IMG/VR virus record: IMGVR_UViG_3300042455_001086
Coordinates: 186,001 to 250,000 of that record
DNA length: 64,000 nucleotides
Direction: 5' to 3' (one strand)
The position numbers were made by a program, and so were the translations under genes. Positions 2,472-63,900 of the stretch are shown piece after piece (the stretch's first letter is position 1; every line of letters begins with the position of its first letter). The notes beneath the pieces were generated by a model. The model saw only the letters and a program-made list of their open reading frames with translations. It ran no database searches and was not told where the DNA came from.

Positions 2472-3647
2472 TTATGCAGTATCTTTTTTGACTTTGAAAA
2501 ATCCATATCCGTATTTTTCTAAATCACCAACATTATCAACCTCACCTATTCTCTCAATATACTCCAAAACAGCCTGTTTTCCTCGTTCAACAAATACATT
2601 TGTTTGGACTTCCGGTTGATCTATCACATTCAATAAGCCTTCATTTTTTGTAAGTGCCGACATAACAAGGTCGTCTTGTCTAAATCCAGAAGAATATGTG
2701 ACATATAAGGTATAGTCCTCAAAGTCATAATAGTCAATATTGTTTATCGTATATGATATATATGTGTTTGATGGATCCGGTCCCCAAACTGTTCCAACAC
2801 AACCGGTTGTTCCGGTTACTTGGGTGCCAATCTTGTATTTACCAGCAAACAACATATCTTTTGGACCATATTGTGCCAAATCGTTAATTGACGATTCAGT
2901 AAATCCACTGATAATAAAAGGAACTGAAGTATAATTACTACTATAAAAATCTGATAAATTTGTATTTGAATCACCACTAAAAATATAATCATAACTTATT
3001 GGTGTTCCAGACCAACTTCCCCCAGCCGGAAAAAATACAGCATTACCATTTGGGTTCGGTATTGTTATTTGTGTTACTGGAACTTTAATTGTTTTTTGGA
3101 CAACCGAAACACCCCAAGGTGAGTTAGCTGTCATTGTAATTGTATATGTTCCATTTGATGCCGGGTATGTATGTGTTATTGGTCCGGCCGATGTTAATGT
3201 GATTTCTGGTGTTCCATCACCCCAATTTAATTTATATGTTATAAGACCAAGAAATTTAATCATCTCTTGTTCTGATGTGTTATAAAAAATATAATTATAT
3301 GGGTTTAATGTGTTTGCTGTAAAAATAAAATTATTGATTACTTCTTTTTGTAGAACAGCCCCATCAAATGTTGAGTAATATCCAATATCAACAGCAGATT
3401 GTGTAAATAAAATAGGTATTGTTAATCCTGTGAGTAAAGATGTTCCATTTGTTCCACCAGATAAAAGATCTCGCATTGATAGATAAAGTCCTGTTGTTCC
3501 GGTAATTGTATTCTCGGTTGTTGCAGTAATAAAACAACAATTGTCAATATCATATATTACTTCGGTTCCTGCGGTATATGGAATATTTACCAAATCCGAA
3601 AGTATATTTTCTGGTGATATTTTAAAATAATATTTTTGTTCTTCCAT
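2472..3647 (-). CDS. Virion structural protein with PKD/Ig-like domain
   Basis: LNWGDGT...ITHTYP...GTYTITMTANSPWG is a PKD-domain signature; Thr/Gly-rich. Confidence 0.6.
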   Translation of the reverse strand: MEEQKYYFKISPENILSDLVNIPYTAGTEVIYDIDNCCFITATTENTITGTTGLYLSMRDLLSGGTNGTSLLTGLTIPILFTQSAVDIGYYSTFDGAVLQKEVINNFIFTANTLNPYNYIFYNTSEQEMIKFLGLITYKLNWGDGTPEITLTSAGPITHTYPASNGTYTITMTANSPWGVSVVQKTIKVPVTQITIPNPNGNAVFFPAGGSWSGTPISYDYIFSGDSNTNLSDFYSSNYTSVPFIISGFTESSINDLAQYGPKDMLFAGKYKIGTQVTGTTGCVGTVWGPDPSNTYISYTINNIDYYDFEDYTLYVTYSSGFRQDDLVMSALTKNEGLLNVIDQPEVQTNVFVERGKQAVLEYIERIGEVDNVGDLEKYGYGFFKVKKDTA

Positions 3648-17998: not shown

Positions 17999-19015
17999 TT
18001 AATTTTTTGTTTTGTTTCTAAAATTTGTTTTTTCTTTTCTTGATAGTTTTAAAAATGGTTTTAAAAAATTTACCCAAGCGTCATCACCTTTTGGTAGAAA
18101 TTTAAAGAATCCGTCGTCCATCATCATTCTAATTAAGTTTCTATGTCCTCTTCCGTCTGGATCCAACGATTCCGAGTAATATAACCTAACCAATTCTTTT
18201 CCTTCCACTGAAATTAGTGGGTTAGCTAAATCCACTAATTTTTCGTTGATTGTGAAAAACTCTTTTCCAAATATTCCCTCTTTGGTTTTTCCACTAAGTA
18301 AATTTTGTAAAGCAACATTTCCTTTTTGTTCCGAAAGTAATGTTTTTGCCTTTGTTAAAATATCGGTATATTTTAACTCCGTATCAAGTATCTCCGGAAA
18401 AAATTTTAGGAATGTTTTTTCACCCAAATAAAATATACCATCAATATTATCCGAACTATCACCAGTTAATATTTTGTAAGTTTTAACATTATAGTGTGGT
18501 ATTTCGGATTCATAAATTTTAATCCCATCACCATTCTTATAATATCTTTTTTGTTGGGGTGAATATATACTTACCTTATCTGAAATAAGTTGTGTTAGAT
18601 CTCTATCAGATGAAAATATTGTTTTTTCTTCATCTTCAGAAATTTGACAATAATAAGCTATTAAATCGTCGGCCTCCGATTGTTCCACTTCCAATTGTCT
18701 AACAAACATTTCTTCAAGGTATTGTTTTACTCTGTTTTTTTGAGTAGTAAAAGATTGTTCTTTATAATCATCATCAACCTTTTGTTTTCTATTTAATTTA
18801 TACTTTGGGTATATAGTTCTTCTCTGTGATGATCCGGTTTCACTATCCCAACAAACAACAATTTTATTGTAATTGTTTTCTTCTAAAAATTTTCTTAAAG
18901 TGTTTAGAAAATGCCAAGTTCCACCAACATGTTCTCCATTGTTAAAGAAGTCTCTAACACCATGCACGCCTATCTTTAATAGGTTGTTACCATCGACCAA
19001 TAAGGTTTTAGTCAT
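17999..19015 (-). CDS. 5'-3' exonuclease / RNase H (FEN-like, T4 rnh / PolA N-terminal type)
   Basis: LLVDGNN, YPKYKLNR, EADDLIA, SSDRDLTQL, GDSSDNIDGI; start moved to ATG 19015, which overlaps the MTase stop (ATGACTAA). Confidence 0.9.
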   Translation of the reverse strand: MTKTLLVDGNNLLKIGVHGVRDFFNNGEHVGGTWHFLNTLRKFLEENNYNKIVVCWDSETGSSQRRTIYPKYKLNRKQKVDDDYKEQSFTTQKNRVKQYLEEMFVRQLEVEQSEADDLIAYYCQISEDEEKTIFSSDRDLTQLISDKVSIYSPQQKRYYKNGDGIKIYESEIPHYNVKTYKILTGDSSDNIDGIFYLGEKTFLKFFPEILDTELKYTDILTKAKTLLSEQKGNVALQNLLSGKTKEGIFGKEFFTINEKLVDLANPLISVEGKELVRLYYSESLDPDGRGHRNLIRMMMDDGFFKFLPKGDDAWVNFLKPFLKLSRKEKTNFRNKTKN

Positions 19016-21092
19016 TAATTTCTTCGTTAAGTGGGTTTGACAATATTGGTTCTTCTTTTGTAATATAGTCGGATAAAAACTCTGTAAATATAGCTTCCAT
19101 AACAGGGACACAAATTGAGTTTCCGGCTAGTGCGACATGTGCTGTATTAGACAATGAGGTTGTAAGTAATAAATCAATATCTTGTTCTTTAACACCCATA
19201 AATCTATACCCTTCTCTTGCTGTAATAGTTCTCACTCTACCATCTTCTGTTAGAATTTGTGGTGATCCACTTGTTGTTAAAGTTGGGGAACACCCATCAA
19301 CAGAATAAATTCTTCTTGCCTGATCGTAGCTAATGTCATCTCTTCTACCGATTAATTTACAGATTGTGTGTTTTTTTGGTTGATGTGGTGTAAATTGACA
19401 ATTAACAATCAGATTTGGATTAAAGTTTTCTTCAATGAACGGTCTCATAGGAATTCGTTCTTTTTTGTGATTATCCACATTCATCATTTTTTCTTTAACC
19501 TCATCAATACTACTATTAAGAACGGATACCATAAAAACTCTTTCTCTATTTTGGGGACATCCGAAATCAGCACCATTCAATACTCTCCAGAAAGAACTAT
19601 ACCCAAGTCCTCTTAAAAAATAGATATGTTTTTGAAAATTATCAATGTGATTTTTTGATATTAGGTTTTTAACATTTTCCATCAAAAGATACTTTGGTCT
19701 ATTGGTACTTAATAATCTTTCAACTTCAAATAGTAATCCACTCCTTGTACCTTCTTTAATTCCTTTTTGAATTCCAGAAATTGAAATGTCCTGACAATTA
19801 TGGGCGATACAACCATTTGCTGTGAATGAATGGTCTTCATCTACTTCAATATCATAAACAAATTCAGTATTATTTGTATTAATAATACCTTTAATTGGTG
19901 TCCAAATAAAACCATTATCAAAAAAAGATTTTTTATTTTTACTTTGGTTTAAATCAAAAGCAATTGTGTAACTATCTCTTTGATTAACATATCTACCATC
20001 AATAATGTATTTATCTTTATTTTTTGTTTTATAAATAGAATAAGGTACATTATAACATTTTGCAATACATTGTCCAATACCATAAATTAATTCACGACTT
20101 ACACTTATAATTCTTTGTCTTGTTGAATTTTGATAAAAGCTTCCATCCGCGGAAAAATAACCCTGGATAAATGATGTCAAAAGATTTCTAGGTAAATCAA
20201 AAATTGTATTAGTCAATTTCTTACCGTGAGCATACTTCCCAAATTGTTGGACAAATAAACCAATTTCTTTTTTTGGTAAATGTATCTTATATGTTGATCC
20301 ATCTCTAACAACTGTCGCATTAATTTTCAATCTTTCCAATCTTTCACTAATTTCTTGTAATTCAGAATCATTTTTATTTGTACAACAAATTATTATACCT
20401 CCTTGGTGTCTCATCCAGCCATCACCAATATATCTTCCAATTAACCACCAAAAATCATTATTATCCATATATTTTGATAATTCATTTTTGTGTCTAGTTT
20501 TTCTACCGTCACCCCATTTAAAATCAATCCCATCCCACTTTGGTATAATACTATTTTGATTTATTGCAACACCAAAATAATCATTACTTGTCAAGTCCTT
20601 ACATTCTTTCCAATAAGGCTCTGTTAAATTATTTTTATCTCCATCAATTTTACTAACAACATAAAATCTGTGGTTTTCAGTTGTTTTTAATTCGTCAAAT
20701 ATTGGTGATTTAACACTCCAAATTTCTTTTTTACCTTGATCAAATTTGTTTGTAACTTTTTTATATGTGTTAGTATGTGTCAAAACCAAATCATCAATTT
20801 CAACATCAACAATATTTTTATACCCAGTATCTGTCAATACTAATGTATCTTTTGTAAAACAAGGAAATGAATAGGTTAATAAATCACATTGTGGTAATGT
20901 GTTTTCATTAACCATTCTTATGTCACCAAGATTACCGTGAGTTGTTGTGTGTAACGCATTATAACACTCATTCGCTTGTTTGAAATTATCACAGTTAGCA
21001 ACACTTTCATAATCCACACCAATGTATTTAAGTGCCAACTCTTGGGTTCCGTATCCGGAAAATAACGATACTACTTTTAATTTACTATTCAT
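19008..21092 (-). CDS. DNA (cytosine-5) methyltransferase interrupted by an intein
   Basis: Motif I LFSGYG, motif IV SFP/CQDIS split by the intein, motif VI MENVKNL, motif VIII PQNRER, C-terminal AGNSI; about 339 aa after splicing. Confidence 0.92.
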   Translation of the reverse strand: MNSKLKVVSLFSGYGTQELALKYIGVDYESVANCDNFKQANECYNALHTTTHGNLGDIRMVNENTLPQCDLLTYSFPCFTKDTLVLTDTGYKNIVDVEIDDLVLTHTNTYKKVTNKFDQGKKEIWSVKSPIFDELKTTENHRFYVVSKIDGDKNNLTEPYWKECKDLTSNDYFGVAINQNSIIPKWDGIDFKWGDGRKTRHKNELSKYMDNNDFWWLIGRYIGDGWMRHQGGIIICCTNKNDSELQEISERLERLKINATVVRDGSTYKIHLPKKEIGLFVQQFGKYAHGKKLTNTIFDLPRNLLTSFIQGYFSADGSFYQNSTRQRIISVSRELIYGIGQCIAKCYNVPYSIYKTKNKDKYIIDGRYVNQRDSYTIAFDLNQSKNKKSFFDNGFIWTPIKGIINTNNTEFVYDIEVDEDHSFTANGCIAHNCQDISISGIQKGIKEGTRSGLLFEVERLLSTNRPKYLLMENVKNLISKNHIDNFQKHIYFLRGLGYSSFWRVLNGADFGCPQNRERVFMVSVLNSSIDEVKEKMMNVDNHKKERIPMRPFIEENFNPNLIVNCQFTPHQPKKHTICKLIGRRDDISYDQARRIYSVDGCSPTLTTSGSPQILTEDGRVRTITAREGYRFMGVKEQDIDLLLTTSLSNTAHVALAGNSICVPVMEAIFTEFLSDYITKEEPILSNPLNEEIND
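19797..20861 (-). mobile_element. Intein (355 aa) with LAGLIDADG homing endonuclease
   Basis: Begins CFTKDTLVLT; block B TTENHRF; LAGLIDADG-like helices LIGRYIGDG and FIQGYFSADG; ends VYDIEVDEDHSFTANGCIAHN, followed by Cys. Confidence 0.93.
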
Positions 21093-36261: not shown

Positions 36262-38256
36262 TTAAATACCGCTAGTTACTTTTTTAATACCTGCATCAAG
36301 TTCTAATAAATTTTTTGGGTCGTTTTTTAATTTATCTATTATCACATTATATAATTCTGGTGGAGCATTTTTTAAAGAACCATCTGAATTTGTAATATCA
36401 ATTTTTTGTTGAACATTAAAATTTTGATCTGTTTTGGTTTCCAGAAGTGTTGTAGCTTTACTGACAAATTCTTTAATTTGTGTTATATAACTTGTGCTAA
36501 CTTCAGACTCGGTAATTGGTTGAAGTCCACCAATACCACCATATATTCCAGATACTCTTGCAGCACCTTGTTTAATACCACTTTCAGCTCCTTCTAATGC
36601 ACCCATAGTCAAACCAAAAACTCTACTCATTAAATTTTTTGGTATATCATTTAGTGTGTCCGATATTCTTGTAATATTTTCAGAAGAAAGACCACCTTCT
36701 GTGAATAAAGAAACTATAGAACTTTCAACTGGTGATGTAATATCAGTGACAGCACCTCTCACATCTTTAGTTTTTACTTTACCATATAGGTTTTCCATTG
36801 CAGATTCTCTAATAGCCAAGTTAGCTTCAGCTGCTCTTTGTAATGTTCCAGAACTTGCAACACCCATTCTTGCGGATAATTCAGTACCTTTCAAAATACC
36901 TTCAATTCTTTCTTGGACGGAAAGCTGATCTCTTGCAATTTCTTCAGCTGATTTATTTTGATTCGCTTGTTCTTTTTTTAGTTCTTCTAACTGATTAGCC
37001 GTTAAATCCTCAACCGCAACTTCTTTTTTCTCACCTGTCTCATCTGTAATCTGAACAACAGCTCTACCGTCTTTCATTTGAGACATATTAGCAATTAACA
37101 TTCTATCTTCTTCACTAGCCGCAAAACTTGGAAATCTAATTTGTTTTAATTTCATATCCAAATCAGAACTTTTGATTGCCATACCTGCCAACTCGTCGGC
37201 ACTCATACCAAGTTCTTTTGCAACTTCTCTTAATTGTAATTTAGCACCTGGTAAAATTTCAAATCCGGTTCCATCCGCTTTCAACCTTGTAAATTGTTGT
37301 GCAACCTTGGTCATTTCATCTTGGAGTTTTGCTGGGTCGTTAAGAGCCATATCCATAGCTGATAGTGGATCTAATAATTCTGTTGATGTTACACCTAATC
37401 TTTGTAATGCTGAAGTAAATTCAATTGCTGATTCTGGATTTAATAATGAATCCGCTTTTGCGAAAACTTTTTCCATATTAACACCAAGCATTGCTGATTG
37501 TGCTTGCATTTTTGCCAACCCTTGGACTCCGTTTTCAAAATTAAACAAATTAAGTTGTTTTAAATTTCCAACAACTCCGGCTGTAACTTCTTTAACATTA
37601 ACACCAACACTTTTAGCATAATTTGCAACATCGGCCATTTCATCACCAACACTTGATAGTTGTGTTCCTACACTTGAAAACTCTTTGACTAAACTTCCAA
37701 CATCAACACCGGCAAATTTGGATGTCGCGGCCAATTCTACTATGGTTTCATTAGCGATTGATGCGTTTGTTTTAAGTGCGTTTGGAATTTGTATTAATTT
37801 GTCTATTCCCTCACTTGTTGTAAAACCTAATTTTACCATTTCTGGTAAAGTATCGGCTATTGTGGATTTCAACTCACCGGCTCTTGCTCGACCAAGACCC
37901 ATTGTGTTGGCAAGTTTTTGTGACTCAATAATTAACGCATTAACATCATTTTTTACTGTTTCTAAACTAGTAAATGGTGCTGTCGCTCTACCAAGACCTT
38001 CACCTAAATCACTAACAATCCCTGAAAAATCTAAAGCACCTGCCGCTTTATCTGATGGCGTATCACTAACGGTAATTGTTGATGGAGAACTTTTTAATTC
38101 TGTTTTTTCTTTCTTGTTTTCAGCATCCGCCATACCTTGTTTATATGCGGCCTCAACGGCTTTTTTCTGGTCGGAAGATAAATCATTAACAGATTTAATT
38201 GTTGATCCAAAAATACCTTGTGCAAGTTTTAATAATAAACTATCAGTAAGACCCAT
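36262..38256 (-). CDS. Tape measure protein (664 aa)
   Basis: Ala/Leu/Ser-rich helical protein directly downstream of the chaperone and tube genes. Confidence 0.7.
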   Translation of the reverse strand: MGLTDSLLLKLAQGIFGSTIKSVNDLSSDQKKAVEAAYKQGMADAENKKEKTELKSSPSTITVSDTPSDKAAGALDFSGIVSDLGEGLGRATAPFTSLETVKNDVNALIIESQKLANTMGLGRARAGELKSTIADTLPEMVKLGFTTSEGIDKLIQIPNALKTNASIANETIVELAATSKFAGVDVGSLVKEFSSVGTQLSSVGDEMADVANYAKSVGVNVKEVTAGVVGNLKQLNLFNFENGVQGLAKMQAQSAMLGVNMEKVFAKADSLLNPESAIEFTSALQRLGVTSTELLDPLSAMDMALNDPAKLQDEMTKVAQQFTRLKADGTGFEILPGAKLQLREVAKELGMSADELAGMAIKSSDLDMKLKQIRFPSFAASEEDRMLIANMSQMKDGRAVVQITDETGEKKEVAVEDLTANQLEELKKEQANQNKSAEEIARDQLSVQERIEGILKGTELSARMGVASSGTLQRAAEANLAIRESAMENLYGKVKTKDVRGAVTDITSPVESSIVSLFTEGGLSSENITRISDTLNDIPKNLMSRVFGLTMGALEGAESGIKQGAARVSGIYGGIGGLQPITESEVSTSYITQIKEFVSKATTLLETKTDQNFNVQQKIDITNSDGSLKNAPPELYNVIIDKLKNDPKNLLELDAGIKKVTSGI

Positions 38257-38282
38257 ATTAACTTTTTACAATAAATACTTTT

Positions 38283-38447
38283 TTATTGATTTTTTGGTGG
38301 TTGCAAATCTTCCAACAGCTTTTCTACAAGATATTTTCTAACATATGTTGGGATTGACAAAAATTCATTATATTGCATATGTATGTATTTTGCAAGATAA
38401 AAATATTCGTCCAATAAGAATTTTGAGTATTTAGAAGAAAGGCCGAA
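38283..38447 (-). CDS. Alternative-frame extension of the tail assembly chaperone (gpGT-like)
   Basis: Open frame FGLSSKYSKFLLDEYFYLAKYIHMQYNEFLSIPTYVRKYLVEKLLEDLQPPKNQ* starts at the T6C run inside the end of the upstream gene and stops just before the tape measure gene. Confidence 0.6.
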   Translation of the reverse strand, partial: FGLSSKYSKFLLDEYFYLAKYIHMQYNEFLSIPTYVRKYLVEKLLEDLQPPKNQ

Positions 38448-39195
38448 AAAATTCCACCCCAAAGGCGATATTTACATCTACCTTTTCTCCTGACGGGGCT
38501 ATAACAGTTCTTTTAAGATCCAATCTTGGTTCATTTTCTTTCATAAAGGATCTAATAAATTTAGAATCTCTAATCGGCATATTTTGGATGAAGGTAGAAA
38601 TCTTATTTTGGTCTTTATCCCCATTTAATTCAACAATCATTTTTGACAACCTTGTGGTGACAATTGGTGCATTATATCCAACTGGATATAGATCAACAAT
38701 TTTATCAATTTCCATTGTGTCAATTAAACTTAGTAATTTTAATTTGACATGAGCACCAGAAGTTGGTAATACAACTTCAAATAAACCTTCGCTATTTGGT
38801 TGAACTTTTGGTTGAATGATGTTCAACTCATCAAGCATAATTGAGGCTTCAAACGATTTTCCTGTTTTTGGGTCATTTACAACAATGTTATATTCCGGAC
38901 CAAATGATGTGTTTCTCAAAAATAAAAGAACGGCCTCAACATCACCCTCTAATAATTCTTCTGGTCTTATATCTCTTTCGTATAATTTATTTCTTAACAA
39001 AGGAATAATAATTGTTTCCTTTATTGTTTTTGTTCCGTCAATATTTACCAAGATATTTTCATCACTAGCAGTTAAATAACCAACTTTAACTGATTTCTTT
39101 TTTGATGTATAGAAAATACCATTTGATGGTAGTTGGACAATATCGTGTGGTAAATTAAAATCCATTTGTCCGTATGTTACTAAATCTTGATCCAT
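38431..39195 (-). CDS. Tail/baseplate assembly chaperone (T4 gp26-like)
   Basis: VQLPSNGIFY, YLTASDENIL, LLEGDVEAVLLFLRNTSFGPEY, C-terminal FGVEFFRP; upstream of the tape measure gene. Confidence 0.75.
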   Translation of the reverse strand: MDQDLVTYGQMDFNLPHDIVQLPSNGIFYTSKKKSVKVGYLTASDENILVNIDGTKTIKETIIIPLLRNKLYERDIRPEELLEGDVEAVLLFLRNTSFGPEYNIVVNDPKTGKSFEASIMLDELNIIQPKVQPNSEGLFEVVLPTSGAHVKLKLLSLIDTMEIDKIVDLYPVGYNAPIVTTRLSKMIVELNGDKDQNKISTFIQNMPIRDSKFIRSFMKENEPRLDLKRTVIAPSGEKVDVNIAFGVEFFRPFF

Positions 39196-39230: not shown

Positions 39231-40814
39231 TTAATCAATAGTTAATTCCCAACGAATATTTCCACAATCATATATCCTATAAATTTTTCTATCAAACATA
39301 ATTTGTTTTTCTGTTTTATCTTTATCATAACCCTCTTTCACCAGATTTGATTTATTAAAATTAAATCTATAATGTCTTTTATCACCAATTACATACCAAT
39401 AATTTGGTTTTGATTGTGAAATCATTTTAAAATTTAATTTCTCATACATTTTACCGTCAAAAATTCTAACATCAGAATATGATATTAACTTTTCTGGTTT
39501 ATATGTTGAAACAAAAGACTTTAATAATTTCGATGCCGATCCAATAACATTTGTGTTTATCTTATTACAAAATCTATTTAATTCCCATTCATCTTTTTTT
39601 CCTCCCATAATAATTCTACCTCTTGAAAATGTCATAAGTGATATTAATTCATCATTATGATATAGTCCTAGTTTTACACTTGAATTAACATTTCCCTGGA
39701 TGTGGTTTTCATCTAAAAACTTTTTAGATTCTGGTGTTGATACTTCTTTTATAATACACTTTCTAGCATATATCTTATTTTCACTAATGTTAAGTTTATT
39801 TTTTATAATTGATTTTACAATCTCTTTTTTATATATCCATTCGTCTTCAAAAATATGAACTAAACCAATTCCAAGATTATTACATTTAATCGTCTTTTCC
39901 AAATGATAATTTGGTGATTTAAATAATTCATTATGCCAATATAGACCATTGAACTCAAACCCCATTTTATACTCCGGAATAAATAAATCGACTTCAGCTT
40001 TTGAATTAGGTAATTTATAATTTGTTATGTGTGTGATATTAATCTCGGTTAAAAACTTGGAAATTTCTTCTTCATAACCACTCCTCTGACTAAAACCAAG
40101 CGGGTTACAATTTAAACAACATTCATAATTTCTTTTATGTCGTTCATACAGTAATTGTTTGGGAAGTTCGGATTCATTTTTACAAGTCGGACAAAAAATA
40201 ATAACCGAACCTTTTTTAACTTCCTTAAAACTAATATCTGGATATAAATTTTTAAAATCATTAATTAGTTTGTTTTTGTAATTATTTGATTTTGCATAAT
40301 TATCAACCCCATATTTTAACTCACAAGTTCTTTTTTGTTTATCAACATTATTGTAACTACTATTACCATAATTTATTTCTTTGGTTTTTTTACCCTTTTC
40401 AATATTATTGTAATTTTCATTACCGTATTTTTTTAATTTGGTTTCTTTTTGTTTTTTTATGAAATCATTATGTTGAGTGTAGAAATCAACACCATACTTT
40501 TTATTGAAAGTTTTCTTTTGTCTATTAATTAATTCGTCCTTTGAATTATTTGCACAAGTTAAGGAACAGAAATCACCGTATGGTTTATCAAATCTATTTC
40601 TAAATTTTATTTCATTGCCGCAAGATACGCATTTTGGTCTTTGTGTTAAATTATGAAAATAAAAATATATTTTTTCTTTAAAGGTTATATTGTCTTGGAT
40701 ATTTTTTGAATATTCAACTATTTTTGAATATAATTCTGGTTCATTATTATTTAACCATTTTTCATTGGTTTTATAACCAGATTTATTATTAGTTGTAAAA
40801 AAAGAAAAATCCAT
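39231..40814 (-). CDS. Hef-like free-standing endonuclease: Zn-finger, KYG repeats, Vsr/PD-(D/E)XK nuclease, Mom-like GNAT domain (copy 1)
   Basis: CxxC pairs, KKYGVD, EVDLFIPEYKMGFEFNGLYWH...HIFEDEW, then IYARKC...FLDENHIQG...ELNRFC...SASKLL...SYSD...IYDCG. Confidence 0.75.
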   Translation of the reverse strand: MDFSFFTTNNKSGYKTNEKWLNNNEPELYSKIVEYSKNIQDNITFKEKIYFYFHNLTQRPKCVSCGNEIKFRNRFDKPYGDFCSLTCANNSKDELINRQKKTFNKKYGVDFYTQHNDFIKKQKETKLKKYGNENYNNIEKGKKTKEINYGNSSYNNVDKQKRTCELKYGVDNYAKSNNYKNKLINDFKNLYPDISFKEVKKGSVIIFCPTCKNESELPKQLLYERHKRNYECCLNCNPLGFSQRSGYEEEISKFLTEINITHITNYKLPNSKAEVDLFIPEYKMGFEFNGLYWHNELFKSPNYHLEKTIKCNNLGIGLVHIFEDEWIYKKEIVKSIIKNKLNISENKIYARKCIIKEVSTPESKKFLDENHIQGNVNSSVKLGLYHNDELISLMTFSRGRIIMGGKKDEWELNRFCNKINTNVIGSASKLLKSFVSTYKPEKLISYSDVRIFDGKMYEKLNFKMISQSKPNYWYVIGDKRHYRFNFNKSNLVKEGYDKDKTEKQIMFDRKIYRIYDCGNIRWELTID

Positions 40815-40876: not shown

Positions 40877-41365
40877 CTAATAAACTAAGATACAACGATC
40901 CATAACAATCGTGGAAGATATTGTTGAAACCTCATCTCCACCATATTTTAAAGATCCCCCATCGTATCCGGTAAGCCAAGCACCTTCAAGAATCCATTTT
41001 TCAACAACAACTCCTGTTGGATCTAACATTTCAAGATCAACATTTTTCTTATATCCAGCGGCATAACCCATACGACCAGTTACAGATTCAGCACAAGTTC
41101 TAATCCATTCCATAATAGCTTGTGTTGCAGACGGTCCGATTGGATCTCTAAATACAACAGGAAGTGATTCCCAATTAAATTTACCAGCAACATAAACCTC
41201 AGTATTTAAGAATGGGATTGGAACTGAATTTATTTTTAATTTTGGTCGTGATGTGCTTTCAACATACCATTCATTTATCCCCAAAGAAGAAGGGAATCTC
41301 AAGATCCACCTATTATTACGTTTAGGTTCGTAAGGGATAGGCATTTTCATTAATAAATCAGCCAT
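40877..41365 (-). CDS. Tail tube protein (T4 gp19-like)
   Basis: YEPKRNNRWIL, SRPK, YVAGKFNWE, YKKNVDLEMLDPTGVVVEKWILEGAW. Confidence 0.9.
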   Translation of the reverse strand: MADLLMKMPIPYEPKRNNRWILRFPSSLGINEWYVESTSRPKLKINSVPIPFLNTEVYVAGKFNWESLPVVFRDPIGPSATQAIMEWIRTCAESVTGRMGYAAGYKKNVDLEMLDPTGVVVEKWILEGAWLTGYDGGSLKYGGDEVSTISSTIVMDRCILVY

Positions 41366-62772: not shown

Positions 62773-63900
62773 TTATGAAGATATTTCTGTCGCAAAGCAA
62801 ATTTCTCCTTTTTCTCTAATTAATCTTTCCATATCATTGAAGGAAATATAAGCTGTGCCATTTATACCCCAACTTCTACCCCAACTATTTTTCATTCTAA
62901 ATATTCTTTTTCTTGTGTCAACACCATTTATCACATAGGCATGACCTCCAAGTAAAGGACCACCAATTCTTATATTTCCATTTCTATCTGGAAAGAACAT
63001 ATTTCTATACCAATTTGTCCCAACCACTACCGGTCCAATATTTAAAACAGAATCAATTAATGTTTGAAGTGTATAACCCCAATAATAATTTCTTACCTTA
63101 CCTACTTGTTGTAGATATTTTACACCACCCCTTACCGAAGTTCCATTATAGTTTTCACCTGGCCATTCATCAAGTTTTTGAGCGTTTTCATAAATTATTT
63201 TAGGTTGAATGATTGGCGCAACACCTGGTTGTCCAATTGGACCGTCTTCCAACCAATGAGCCCAAGAAAAACCAACACAATGCGGTGTATTTCCTTGATT
63301 TCCCCACCATCCATTATCATCCCAATATCTTGATGTTATTGTCACCCTTGATCTTGATGAGGTTAAAAGGTGGTTTTCAATTAAATAATTATTATCCCGT
63401 TCATCTGGCTTATGTGTTCTACCAAGTGGAAATTCTGTTTCGACAACTGTTGTTGTTGCTGTTACTGGAATAACTGGTGTTGAAACACAACAAGGAAATT
63501 CTGAAACATAACAACTTTCATATGGTAAATCATCACCTATAAAACTTTCTTGGATATTAATATATAATTTTTCTCTTATCGGTAAAATTAAAACACCCTC
63601 GTTCTCGGTTCTAAATAAAAACTGACCTTCAAATCTCCCAACCTTATTTGTGTCTTTTGACTGGAATTGGTAATAAACATAATACTCAACCGGAGCATTT
63701 GGATCCGTAAATTCTTTTTTTGTGAAACCAGCCGGCCTTGTCACTATTTTTGGAATTCCGGTTTCAACATCTGACATTGAAAAGAATATTGCTGATTCCT
63801 CAATGAAATTCATAAAACTATTGTAGTCACTTCTACCGTCTTTTACCACTTGAATTTTTAACAATGGTAATGTTGCGTTCTTTTTAATATAAAATTCCAT
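62773..63900 (-). CDS. BppU-like Ig domain fused to a papain-like (C1) cysteine peptidase
   Basis: N-terminal FYIKKNATLPLLK...YQFQSKDTNKVGRFEGQF; catalytic motifs QGNTPHCVGFSW, GGHAYVING, KNSWG. Confidence 0.8.
   Translation of the reverse strand: MEFYIKKNATLPLLKIQVVKDGRSDYNSFMNFIEESAIFFSMSDVETGIPKIVTRPAGFTKKEFTDPNAPVEYYVYYQFQSKDTNKVGRFEGQFLFRTENEGVLILPIREKLYINIQESFIGDDLPYESCYVSEFPCCVSTPVIPVTATTTVVETEFPLGRTHKPDERDNNYLIENHLLTSSRSRVTITSRYWDDNGWWGNQGNTPHCVGFSWAHWLEDGPIGQPGVAPIIQPKIIYENAQKLDEWPGENYNGTSVRGGVKYLQQVGKVRNYYWGYTLQTLIDSVLNIGPVVVGTNWYRNMFFPDRNGNIRIGGPLLGGHAYVINGVDTRKRIFRMKNSWGRSWGINGTAYISFNDMERLIREKGEICFATEISS

What the first reader, a model, noticed from the sequence alone, without database searches (positions are those of the whole stretch)
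38283..38460. Candidate +1 (or -2) programmed frameshift in the tail assembly chaperone
Seen: the chaperone ends GAA TTT TTT CGG CCT TTC TTC TAA. Slipping from TTT to TTC (both Phe) just before a CGG codon, uncommon in this AT-rich genome, opens a 54-codon frame that fills the gap to the tape measure gene and has no early ATG. Known: long-tailed phages make G/GT chaperones by frameshifting upstream of the tape measure gene, usually -1 (-2 in Mu). Inference: a hungry-codon +1 or a -2 variant in a gp26-like gene of a T4-like phage.
Basis: partly seen in the sequence, partly recalled or inferred. Interest (0 to 1): 0.6.

Follow-up and report, generated by a model that had tools for sequence, protein, structure and literature searches.

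The report
Conserved +1 frameshift in gp26-like tail chaperone
A freshwater jumbo phage, and about 150 relatives including cultured phages, appear to make a second, longer form of their T4 gp26-like tail chaperone when the ribosome slips one base forward on a U-run, a signal that current phage annotations miss.

Summary
On the minus strand, a gp26-family gene (38431..39195) ends GAA TTT TTT CGG CCT TTC TTC TAA. The +1 frame stays open for 53 more codons and stops 26 nt before the tape-measure-like gene.

- All 144 unique junctions from about 180 viral contigs, and six cultured phages, keep a homologous +1-frame peptide.
- It aligns without gaps from the FF codons onward and is under purifying selection only in that frame (pN/pS 0.45, against 1.05 and 1.15).
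- No start codon is conserved. In 31 junction types there is none at all between the last +1-frame stop and the U-run.
- The shift site is U6C in the window's clade and U7 in a sister clade. Four or five lineages have only UUU followed by C or U. That fits a +1 slip of tRNA-Phe and argues against −2 or RNA-polymerase slippage as the general route.
- One jumbo phage (a second only weakly) reaches the same module through a canonical −1 heptamer, U UUU UUC, at the same site.

CGG is very rare in this genome, but relatives use other codons there, so a hungry codon is not the conserved cause. T4 itself has no extension. No expression data exist. This is a new variant of the G/GT theme.

The parts
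38431..39195 (-). gp26-family gene, zero frame (254 aa, P0001); a T4 'baseplate hub assembly chaperone' homologue sitting in the tail-assembly-chaperone position
   Evidence: PF12322 T4_baseplate 39.1 bits (cut-off 24.5), phrog_150 E 4e-16. T4 gp26 itself scores 215.6 bits on the same model. AF2 model pLDDT 84.5. Best fold matches are tail assembly chaperones, but they are weak.
38443..38451 (-). Proposed shift site TTT TTT CGG. The P-site tRNA-Phe slips from UUU (38448-38446) to UUC (38447-38445) while the very rare CGG waits in the A site.
   Evidence: TTTTTTCG is invariant in 71 unique junctions of the window's clade. The sister clade has TTTTTTT(G/A) in 70 of 73. UUU followed by Y is the only shared feature in lineages without a U-run. 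CGG is 0.31 per 1000 codons.
38286..38444 (-). +1-frame extension, 53 codons (GLSSKYSKFLLDEY...PPKNQ); a small three-helix module added to gp26 residues 1-250 to give a 303-aa product (P0005)
   Evidence: Gapless alignment over 50 codons in 69 unique sequences. pN/pS 0.445 in this frame against 1.05 and 1.15 in the other two. AF2 pLDDT 89.8 with helices 6-23, 27-32 and 35-49. Homologous peptides in distant phages.
38283..38285 (-). TAA stop of the extension frame
38460..38462 (-). TTG in the +1 frame; the rival independent start, judged incidental
   Evidence: Present in 61 of 71 unique junctions (86%). That is what the invariant Phe-Gly pair (TTT GGG) gives with TTT at 83% of Phe codons. It is cut off from the extension by a TAG in L072, L074 and L079.
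38376..38378 (-). Internal ATG (MQYNEF), extension codon 25; the rival independent start, not conserved
   Evidence: ATG at this column in 9 of 69 unique sequences and TTG in 3. No start codon at all in extension codons 3-16 in 59 of 69.
36262..38256 (-). 664-aa tape-measure-like protein (P0003)
   Evidence: No Pfam or PHROG match. Atlas feature search finds tape-measure clusters (PF10145, PF20155) at score 0.91. The gene in the same position is annotated as tape measure in phages immuto, SP-15, HSE3 and LIS04.
40877..41365 (-). Tail tube protein (gp19 family)
   Evidence: PF06841 29.1 bits, phrog_4542 E 2e-23. It lies directly upstream of gp26 in nearly all related loci.
39231..40814 (-). Hef-like homing endonuclease inserted between the tube gene and gp26
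   Evidence: phrog_3339 E 2e-116; blastn matches to Hef-like endonucleases of Campylobacter and Bacillus phages.

Best explanation
The gp26-like gene makes two proteins. Most ribosomes stop at TAA and give the 254-aa chaperone. A fraction shift one base forward on GAA UUU UUU CGG. Peptidyl-tRNA-Phe (anticodon GAA) re-pairs from UUU to UUC, and the E-site tRNA-Phe can re-pair as well, while the A site waits on a poorly decoded codon, which here is the very rare CGG. Those ribosomes read GGC next and add a 53-residue three-helix module, giving a 303-aa fusion with the junction ...VEFFGLSSK.... By position (tube, gp26, tape measure) and by logic this is the counterpart of lambda G/GT. The short form would coat the tape-measure protein. 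The long form would carry an extra domain that, by analogy only, recruits another tail part. Status of each step: the conserved second frame, its purifying selection, the absence of a conserved start and the conserved U-run are shown by sequence comparison. The ribosomal (rather than transcriptional) nature of the shift, its efficiency and the role of the module are inferred.
For: (1) All 71 and 73 unique junctions from two scans of viral contigs keep a +1 extension of 43-96 aa with homologous sequence. The two scans found gp26 proteins 54-100% and about 30% identical to the window's.
(2) The extension aligns without a gap from the FF codons for 50 codons.
(3) pN/pS is 0.445 in the +1 frame against 1.05 and 1.15 in the other frames. 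It is 0.46 for codons 8-24, which lie upstream of the window's internal ATG.
(4) No start codon is conserved. 2 + 29 junction types have no ATG, GTG or TTG between the last +1-frame stop and the U-run, often because that stop lies one codon before the run. 59 of 69 have none in extension codons 3-16. Bacillus phage HSE3 likewise has none.
(5) The site itself is conserved: TTTTTTCG invariant in 71 of 71, and T7 in 70 of 73. The first Phe codon is never TTC in the window's clade although TTC is 17% of Phe codons.
(6) Lineages without a homopolymer (GXN1 and HSE3 TTC TTT CGT, LR756508 TTT CTA, immuto and L117/L118 TTT CTT TGG, L109 TTC TTT TAC) still have UUU followed by Y.
(7) LR756511 reaches a homologous module (hhalign probability 96.5%, E 9e-10) in the -1 frame from a canonical U UUU UUC heptamer at the same FF site. 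Atu_ph07 has the same layout, but its homology is weak.
(8) Synteny of tube, gp26 and tape measure holds in cultured phages.
(9) The best fold matches of the gp26 model are tail assembly chaperones: HK97 2ob9 with Foldseek probability 0.91, and 3fgx, 3klu and 2ob9 with Z 5.2-5.4.
(10) CGG is 0.31 per 1000 codons, and the phage's 24 tRNA genes include Phe(GAA) but no Arg(CCG).
(11) UUU is reported among the most shift-prone P-site codons in prfB-type +1 shifting (PMC10274946).
Against: There is no protein or RNA evidence. The one metatranscriptome that holds this phage has contigs over the extension and over gp26 but not over the shift site. The A-site codon is not conserved across the family, so the 'hungry codon' part is local at best. 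No RNA structure is predicted around the site (z = -0.02). An SD-like stimulator is unlikely because only 2 of 33 genes here have an SD-like leader. A TTG sits 4 codons upstream in 86% of the window's clade. In LR756511 the module has its own ATG overlapping the gp26 stop (TAATG), so it can perhaps work unfused. The strong preference for a long U-run also fits RNA-polymerase slippage or a -2 shift. The fold matches to chaperones are below the level at which the tool says chance matches are common.
Confidence: 0.68

Rival explanations
1. RNA-polymerase slippage on the T6 run (T7 in the sister clade). A minority of transcripts lose one U or gain two, which puts the extension in frame without any ribosomal event. 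A one-U deletion gives the same protein as a +1 shift. A two-U insertion gives the same protein as a -2 shift.
For: The homopolymer is kept far more strictly than a UUU-Y slip alone would need: T6 in 71 of 71 and T7 in 70 of 73 unique junctions, and the first Phe codon is never TTC in the window's clade. No RNA structure or SD-like stimulator is evident.
Against: Several lineages keep the extension with runs of only 3-4 T (TTC TTT C, TTT CTA, TTT CTT T, TTC TTT T). From general knowledge, runs of 6-7 are short for efficient bacterial polymerase slippage. The -1 lineages have the run in exactly the phase of a ribosomal X XXY YYZ heptamer.
Confidence: 0.12
2. A -2 ribosomal shift on the U-run. 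The P-site tRNA-Phe slides back two bases, one more Phe is inserted, and the junction is VEFFFGLSSK.
For: It reaches the same frame. Perfect re-pairing is possible on U6 and U7. PMC10274946 reports -2 shifts that present as +1 on GUU_UUU.
Against: In lineages with TTC TTT C or AAC TTT CTA, a -2 slip would put tRNA-Phe on UCU or ACU, while +1 gives UUC.
Confidence: 0.08
3. The downstream frame is a separate small gene. It would start at the TTG (38462), at the internal ATG (38378), or by re-initiation after the gp26 stop, giving a free 31-59-aa protein.
For: A TTG is present in 86% of the window's clade. In LR756511 the homologous module has an ATG overlapping the gp26 stop, and in Atu_ph07 an ATG follows the FF codons by two codons. 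Annotators of Mel-JY01 called a TTG-started overlapping gene.
Against: The TTG frequency equals what codon usage predicts for the invariant Phe-Gly pair. A stop separates it from the extension in L072, L074 and L079. 31 junction types and phage HSE3 have no possible start. The internal ATG is present in only 9 of 69. Purifying selection and gapless register begin at the FF codons, upstream of any candidate internal start. Upstream of the U-run the +1 frame shows no conservation: W, L, S or stop at one codon and N, S or T at the next.
Confidence: 0.07
4. An artefact or a decaying gene: a homopolymer sequencing error, or a real frameshift mutation in a once continuous gene.
For: Homopolymers are error-prone, and the two frames differ by a single base.
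Against: The same two-frame layout is found in about 180 independent assemblies and six cultured phage genomes, with varied site sequences and with the zero-frame stop always kept 2-6 codons downstream. Independent DNA assemblies show no indel at the run.
Confidence: 0.01

Closest known systems
Lambda gpG/gpGT and the conserved tail-assembly-chaperone frameshift of long-tailed phages (P2 E/E+E' in myophages)
   Same: The gene lies between the tube (major tail) gene and the tape-measure gene. Two products share an N-terminus. The shift lies a few codons before the stop of the short form. The longer form adds a small extra domain. The layout is conserved while the sequences diverge. The best, though weak, fold matches of gp26 are chaperones of this class.
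   Different: The direction is +1 on UUU UUU C (or U7) rather than -1 on an X XXY YYZ heptamer. The protein belongs to Pfam PF12322 (T4 gp26), not to a named chaperone family. At 254 aa it is about twice the size of G-type chaperones. Within one homologous family both directions occur: +1 in most lineages, and -1 in LR756511 and perhaps Atu_ph07. Binding partners are untested.
T4 gp26 (baseplate hub assembly chaperone)
   Same: Same Pfam family (39.1 bits here, 215.6 for T4). It shares the C-terminal E-F-F motif: T4 ends KEFFELL and the window ends VEFFRPFF. T4 gp26 is listed as a chaperone absent from the virion in PMC3004832. T4 also makes two products from gene 26, by an annotated internal start 26'.
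   Different: T4 has no extension frame; gene 25 starts at the gene 26 stop. T4 gene 26 is not next to the tube and tape-measure genes. The extension profile finds nothing in T4 gp28 or gp51.
prfB (RF2) and other P-site +1 shifts (Ty1 CUU AGG C; Listeria phage PSA capsid and tail genes)
   Same: A P-site tRNA can re-pair one base forward, and the A-site codon is slowly decoded (here CGG at 0.31 per 1000 codons). UUU is reported as one of the most shift-prone P-site codons in prfB randomisation (PMC10274946).
   Different: There is no stop codon in the A site. No usable SD-like stimulator is likely, because these genomes hardly use SD. The slow codon is not conserved among relatives. A second Phe codon upstream is conserved, which hints that the E-site tRNA takes part.

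Membership tests
Pfam PF12322 / PHROG 150 (T4 gp26, baseplate hub assembly protein) | Profile match above the curated threshold over most of the model | tested here: met
   39.1 bits against a cut-off of 24.5, profile positions 11-209 of 219. phrog_150 E 4e-16. T4 gp26 scores 215.6 bits on the same model.
Pfam PF12322 / PHROG 150 (T4 gp26, baseplate hub assembly protein) | Needed for hub assembly but absent from the finished virion | not testable with these tools
   Known for T4 only (PMC3004832).
Tail assembly chaperone pair with programmed frameshift (G/GT type) | Gene located between the tube (major tail) gene and the tape-measure gene | tested here: met
   The order is tube 40877..41365, a homing endonuclease insert, gp26, then the 664-aa tape-measure-like ORF. 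The same order holds with annotated tape-measure genes in immuto, SP-15, HSE3 and LIS04 and in nearly all contigs.
Tail assembly chaperone pair with programmed frameshift (G/GT type) | A second frame that overlaps the 3' end, has no start of its own, and is conserved and under selection | tested here: met
   144 of 144 unique junctions; pN/pS 0.445 against about 1.1; no start codon in 31 junction types.
Tail assembly chaperone pair with programmed frameshift (G/GT type) | Canonical -1 slippery heptamer X XXY YYZ | tested here: not met
   In the window the run is phased TTT TTT C and the open frame is +1. The -1 heptamer U UUU UUC occurs only in LR756511 and Atu_ph07.
Tail assembly chaperone pair with programmed frameshift (G/GT type) | Chaperone fold shared with solved examples (HK97 2ob9, YqbN 3klu) | tested here: inconclusive
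   These are the top-ranked matches, but they are weak: Foldseek E 0.29 with probability 0.91, and Z 5.2-5.4 over residues ~130-230. The tool states that Z under 8 may be chance.
Tail assembly chaperone pair with programmed frameshift (G/GT type) | Both products are made in a fixed ratio, bind the tape measure, and the long form binds the tube | not testable with these tools
   No expression data exist. The one complex prediction gave no verdict (listed under Tried and rejected).
P-site +1 ribosomal frameshift (prfB / Ty1 type) | The P-site codon allows re-pairing of its tRNA in the +1 frame | tested here: met
   UUU to UUC for tRNA-Phe(GAA). UUU followed by Y is present in every lineage with a +1 extension.
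P-site +1 ribosomal frameshift (prfB / Ty1 type) | A slowly decoded A-site codon (stop or rare sense codon) | tested here: inconclusive
   Met in the window (CGG is 6 of 19,334 codons; there is no phage tRNA-Arg(CCG)). The codon varies among relatives: CGU, CGC, CAC, UGG, UAC, AGU, CUA.
P-site +1 ribosomal frameshift (prfB / Ty1 type) | An upstream SD-like stimulator at short spacing | tested here: not met
   GGGGUGG lies upstream but varies among relatives. Only 2 of 33 genes in the window have SD-like leaders.

The most novel reading that the evidence does not exclude
The PF12322 (T4 gp26) family is the tail assembly chaperone of a very large group of T4-type and jumbo myophages. It carries an ancient two-product recoding signal at one fixed Phe-Phe site, which different lineages read +1 (U6C or U7, most lineages) or -1 (U UUU UUC), and which T4 has lost. 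That would give T4 gp26 a defined role as tape-measure chaperone. It would also provide a natural series of homologous +1 and -1 shift sites, in cultivable phages, for studying what sets the direction of frameshifting.
Probability: 0.45. Interest if true: 0.72.

Novelty: new variant of a known kind. Interest (0 to 1): 0.62.

Why it matters
Three reasons.

First, annotation. In every cultured relative I looked at (Flavobacterium phage immuto, Bacillus phages SP-15 and HSE3, Listeria phage LIS04, Microcystis phage Mel-JY01, Streptococcus phage GXN1), the long form is missing. It is replaced by an unexplained gap or by a short 'hypothetical protein' started at a chance ATG or TTG.

Second, tail assembly. 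The finding ties T4 gp26, a protein whose role in hub assembly has stayed vague, to the G/GT chaperone logic, and it predicts a small three-helix module as a new assembly part.

Third, recoding. It offers a conserved sense-codon +1 site with no stop codon, no SD-like signal and no predicted RNA structure. Homologues use a -1 heptamer at the same residue pair. Several hosts are easy to grow, so the mechanism is directly testable.

Tried and rejected
(1) Folding the fused 303-aa product. I did not send the fusion to any other remote tool, and folded the two frames separately instead (and 95/98).

(2) Complex prediction of the extension with the tube protein. The result was 'no answer' (score 0.00). 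It is not evidence either way.

(3) Family searches for the extension in Pfam and PHROGs, Foldseek against the PDB, and hhalign against T4 gp28 and gp51 found nothing. The module has no known family.

(4) Folding 121 nt of RNA around the site gave z = -0.02, so no stimulatory structure.

(5) An SD-like stimulator (GGGGUGG upstream) was rejected because these genes lack SD leaders.

(6) The hungry codon as the general cause was rejected because the A-site codon varies among relatives.

(7) Reads: the only RNA runs hold a tenth of the stretch as contigs and do not cover the shift site, so transcript slippage could not be tested.

(8) Literature: six searches found no paper that describes a frameshift in gp26-family genes. 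Subscription journals are not covered, so prior description cannot be excluded.

(9) A scan seeded with T4 and other distant gp26 proteins failed because the alignment had no conserved block. A single-protein scan with SP-15 found only SP-15 itself. The spread of the extension among T4-proper relatives and cyanophages therefore remains unsurveyed.

(10) tblastn of the 59-aa frame against cultured phages gave one weak hit, LR756511. hhalign later confirmed it.

Full report
**What is in the window**

All genes around the finding lie on the minus strand. The order is:
- tail tube protein, 40877..41365 (gp19 family);
- a Hef-like homing endonuclease, 39231..40814;
- a 254-aa protein, 38431..39195;
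- a 59-codon open frame, 38283..38462;
- a 664-aa protein, 36262..38256;
- a 1683-aa protein, then a gp25-like baseplate wedge protein.

The 254-aa protein matches Pfam PF12322 (T4_baseplate, the family of T4 gp26) at 39.1 bits against a cut-off of 24.5. It also matches PHROG 150, 'baseplate hub'.

Shifting +1 after the second TTT gives 53 further sense codons that end 26 nt before the ATG of the 664-aa gene. That gene has no family match. A feature search places it next to tape-measure clusters, and the gene in the same position is annotated as tape measure in cultured relatives.

The window is part of a 257-kb virus record with inverted terminal repeats. The phage occurs in lake-water and freshwater metagenomes from many studies.

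**Is the second frame real?**

A first scan of viral contigs gave 19 loci with gp26 proteins 83-100% identical to the window's. A 33-nt block from TTTGGGG to the TAA stop is invariant in them, while both flanks vary at synonymous sites. Downstream changes are synonymous in the +1 frame, even upstream of the window's internal ATG.

A profile scan added 80 loci at 54-84% identity. A second scan, ranked on a distant member, added 80 more at about 30% identity to the window. Every one of the 71 + 73 unique junctions keeps a +1-frame extension of 43-96 aa with recognisably the same sequence.

In the window's clade:
- the extension aligns without a single gap for 50 codons, counted from the two Phe codons;
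- pN/pS is 0.445 in the +1 frame against 1.05 and 1.15 in the other two frames;
- pN/pS is 0.46 for codons 8-24 alone, which lie before the internal ATG.

From the base composition, I calculate that 53 codons stay open by chance about 1.3% of the time in a 30.7% GC genome. That this recurs in about 180 assemblies is not chance.

**Does the frame start by itself?**

The TTG at 38462 is present in 61 of 71 unique junctions (86%). It arises automatically from the invariant Phe-Gly pair (TTT GGG), and TTT is 83% of Phe codons here, so no selection is needed to explain it. In L072, L074 and L079 the Val codon is GTA. That puts a TAG in the +1 frame between the TTG and the U-run and leaves no possible start.

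The codons of the +1 frame upstream of the run are not conserved. One is W, L, S or a stop, and the next is N, S or T. Constraint in that frame therefore begins at the run.

The ATG at MQYNEF is present in only 9 of 69 unique sequences. 59 of 69 have no ATG, GTG or TTG anywhere in extension codons 3-16.

In the sister clade, 29 of 73 junction types have no start codon between the last +1-frame stop and the run. Often that stop lies one codon before the run. Bacillus phage HSE3 is the same. Independent initiation cannot explain the family.

**The shift site**

- The window's clade has GAR TTT TTT CGN, with TTTTTTCG invariant.
- The sister clade has TTT TTT TGG or TTT TTT TAC, that is T7, in 70 of 73 junctions.
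- Phage SP-15 has TTT TTT CAC, and phage LIS04 has TTT TTT AGT.
- Four or five lineages have no long run: GXN1 and HSE3 (TTC TTT CGT), LR756508 (AAC TTT CTA), Flavobacterium phage immuto with L117/L118 (TTT CTT TGG), and L109 (TTC TTT TAC).

The one shared feature is a UUU codon followed by U or C. tRNA-Phe (anticodon GAA) can re-pair one base forward on that sequence. A -2 slip would mispair in the lineages that lack a run, and RNA-polymerase slippage needs a homopolymer. That is why I rank a +1 ribosomal shift first.

The long run is nevertheless kept more strictly than UUU-Y alone requires. This may mean that the E-site tRNA-Phe also re-pairs. It also keeps the polymerase and -2 rivals alive for the run-bearing clades.

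CGG is indeed very rare here: 6 of 19,334 codons. The phage's 24 tRNA genes include Phe(GAA) and Arg(ACG, UCU) but not Arg(CCG). Relatives, however, use CGU, CGC, CAC, UGG, UAC, AGU or CUA at that position. A hungry codon may raise efficiency in this phage but is not the conserved cause.

No RNA structure is predicted around the site (z = -0.02). An SD-like stimulator is implausible, because only 2 of 33 genes in the window have an SD-like leader.

**The same site read in the other direction**

In the huge uncultured phage LR756511, the gp26 homologue (PF12322, 57.5 bits) has GGT TTT TTC at the homologous Phe-Phe position. That is a canonical -1 heptamer, U UUU UUC. The -1 frame is open from there through a peptide that matches the extension profile (hhalign probability 96.5%, E 9e-10). 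That peptide also has an ATG overlapping the gp26 stop (TAATG), so either a -1 shift or translational coupling is possible.

Agrobacterium phage Atu_ph07 has CAT TTT TTC and a -1-frame peptide of similar pattern, but its homology is weak (E 0.0085). It too has an ATG two codons after the Phe-Phe codons.

The run is thus phased TTT TTT C where the module lies in the +1 frame, and T TTT TTC where it lies in the -1 frame. This argues that the run is the recoding signal. The ATGs in these two phages are also the best argument that the module can work unfused.

**Relation to known systems**

The position (tube, gp26, tape measure) holds in nearly all loci and in six cultured phages. Their records annotate the gp26 homologue as 'baseplate hub' or 'hypothetical protein'. 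After it they show either a gap or a short hypothetical gene, never a joined feature.

An AF2 model of the 254-aa form (pLDDT 84.5) has the HK97 tail assembly chaperone as its best Foldseek match (2ob9, probability 0.91, E 0.29). An exhaustive structural search ranks 3fgx, 3klu (YqbN) and 2ob9 first, at Z 5.2-5.4 over residues ~130-230. From memory, YqbN belongs to the XkdN-like chaperone family. These scores are below the level that the tool calls safe, so the fold link is suggestive only.

The extension folds as three helices (pLDDT 89.8). It has no match in Pfam, PHROGs or the PDB.

T4 gp26 is a hub assembly chaperone that is absent from the virion (PMC3004832). It shares the C-terminal E-F-F motif, but gene 25 starts at its stop codon and there is no extension. 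The extension profile does not match T4 gp28 or gp51.

This locus therefore works like lambda G/GT or P2 E/E+E'. It is a member of the gp26 family, not of a named chaperone family, and it shifts forward rather than backward.

**Limits**

Nothing here shows that the long protein is made. The complex test of the extension with the tube protein returned no verdict. RNA contigs do not cover the site. DNA assemblies from independent lake samples show no indel at the run, which rules out an assembly error. Six literature searches found no description of a frameshift in gp26-family genes, but subscription journals are not searched.

**Verdict**

The hungry-codon detail is local to this phage and is not the conserved cause. 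This is a new variant of a known kind. It is widespread, unannotated and testable in cultured phages.

Noticed in passing
outside the window: G000:C1:48647-48726 (minus strand): ARAGORN reports one of the phage's 24 tRNA genes as 'tRNA-??? (actt)'. It has an 8-nt anticodon loop with a four-base anticodon ACUU, which would read AAGU. It is not complementary to UUUC, so it is not an obvious helper at the gp26 site.
   Followed up: no
window 39231-40814 (-): A Hef-like homing endonuclease (phrog_3339 E 2e-116) sits between the tube gene and gp26. In nearly all related contigs the tube gene stops about 100 nt before gp26, so this is a recent insertion.
   Followed up: partly
window 38257-38282 (-), and upstream of the starts at 63900, 62747, 13422 and 43980: A recurrent A/T-rich motif (GTATTTAT[T/A]GTAAAAA, or TATAATCAATATTTA) lies 10-25 nt before several start codons. 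In the copy between the extension stop and the tape-measure ATG, TATTTAT is invariant among close relatives. It is a candidate late promoter.
   Followed up: no
whole window: Only 2 of 33 long ORFs have an SD-like sequence within 25 nt of the start, and leaders are runs of A. This points to SD-independent initiation, as in Bacteroidota hosts. The nearest cultured phage with the same gp26 layout infects Flavobacterium.
   Followed up: partly
window 2472-3647 (-) codon 204, and 17999-19111 (-) codon 236: Two more in-frame TTT TTT C sites occur, both followed by CCG. They lie in mid-gene and their +1 frames are only 10 and 7 codons long. If the motif is slippery by itself, these would be abortive shift sites.
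   Followed up: partly
L024 (phage T4) 10349-10404: T4 gene 28 overlaps the end of gene 27 by 56 nt and ends at the start of the tape-measure gene 29. The extension profile found no similarity to gp28.
   Followed up: partly
L021 (Microcystis phage Mel-JY01) 4740-4976; L185 (phage immuto) 2218-2329; L187 (SP-15) 2185-2263; L189 (LIS04) 2209-2438: Public records of cultured phages annotate the extension as a TTG-started overlapping gene, as a truncated short ORF, or not at all. None carries a joined frameshift feature.
   Followed up: yes
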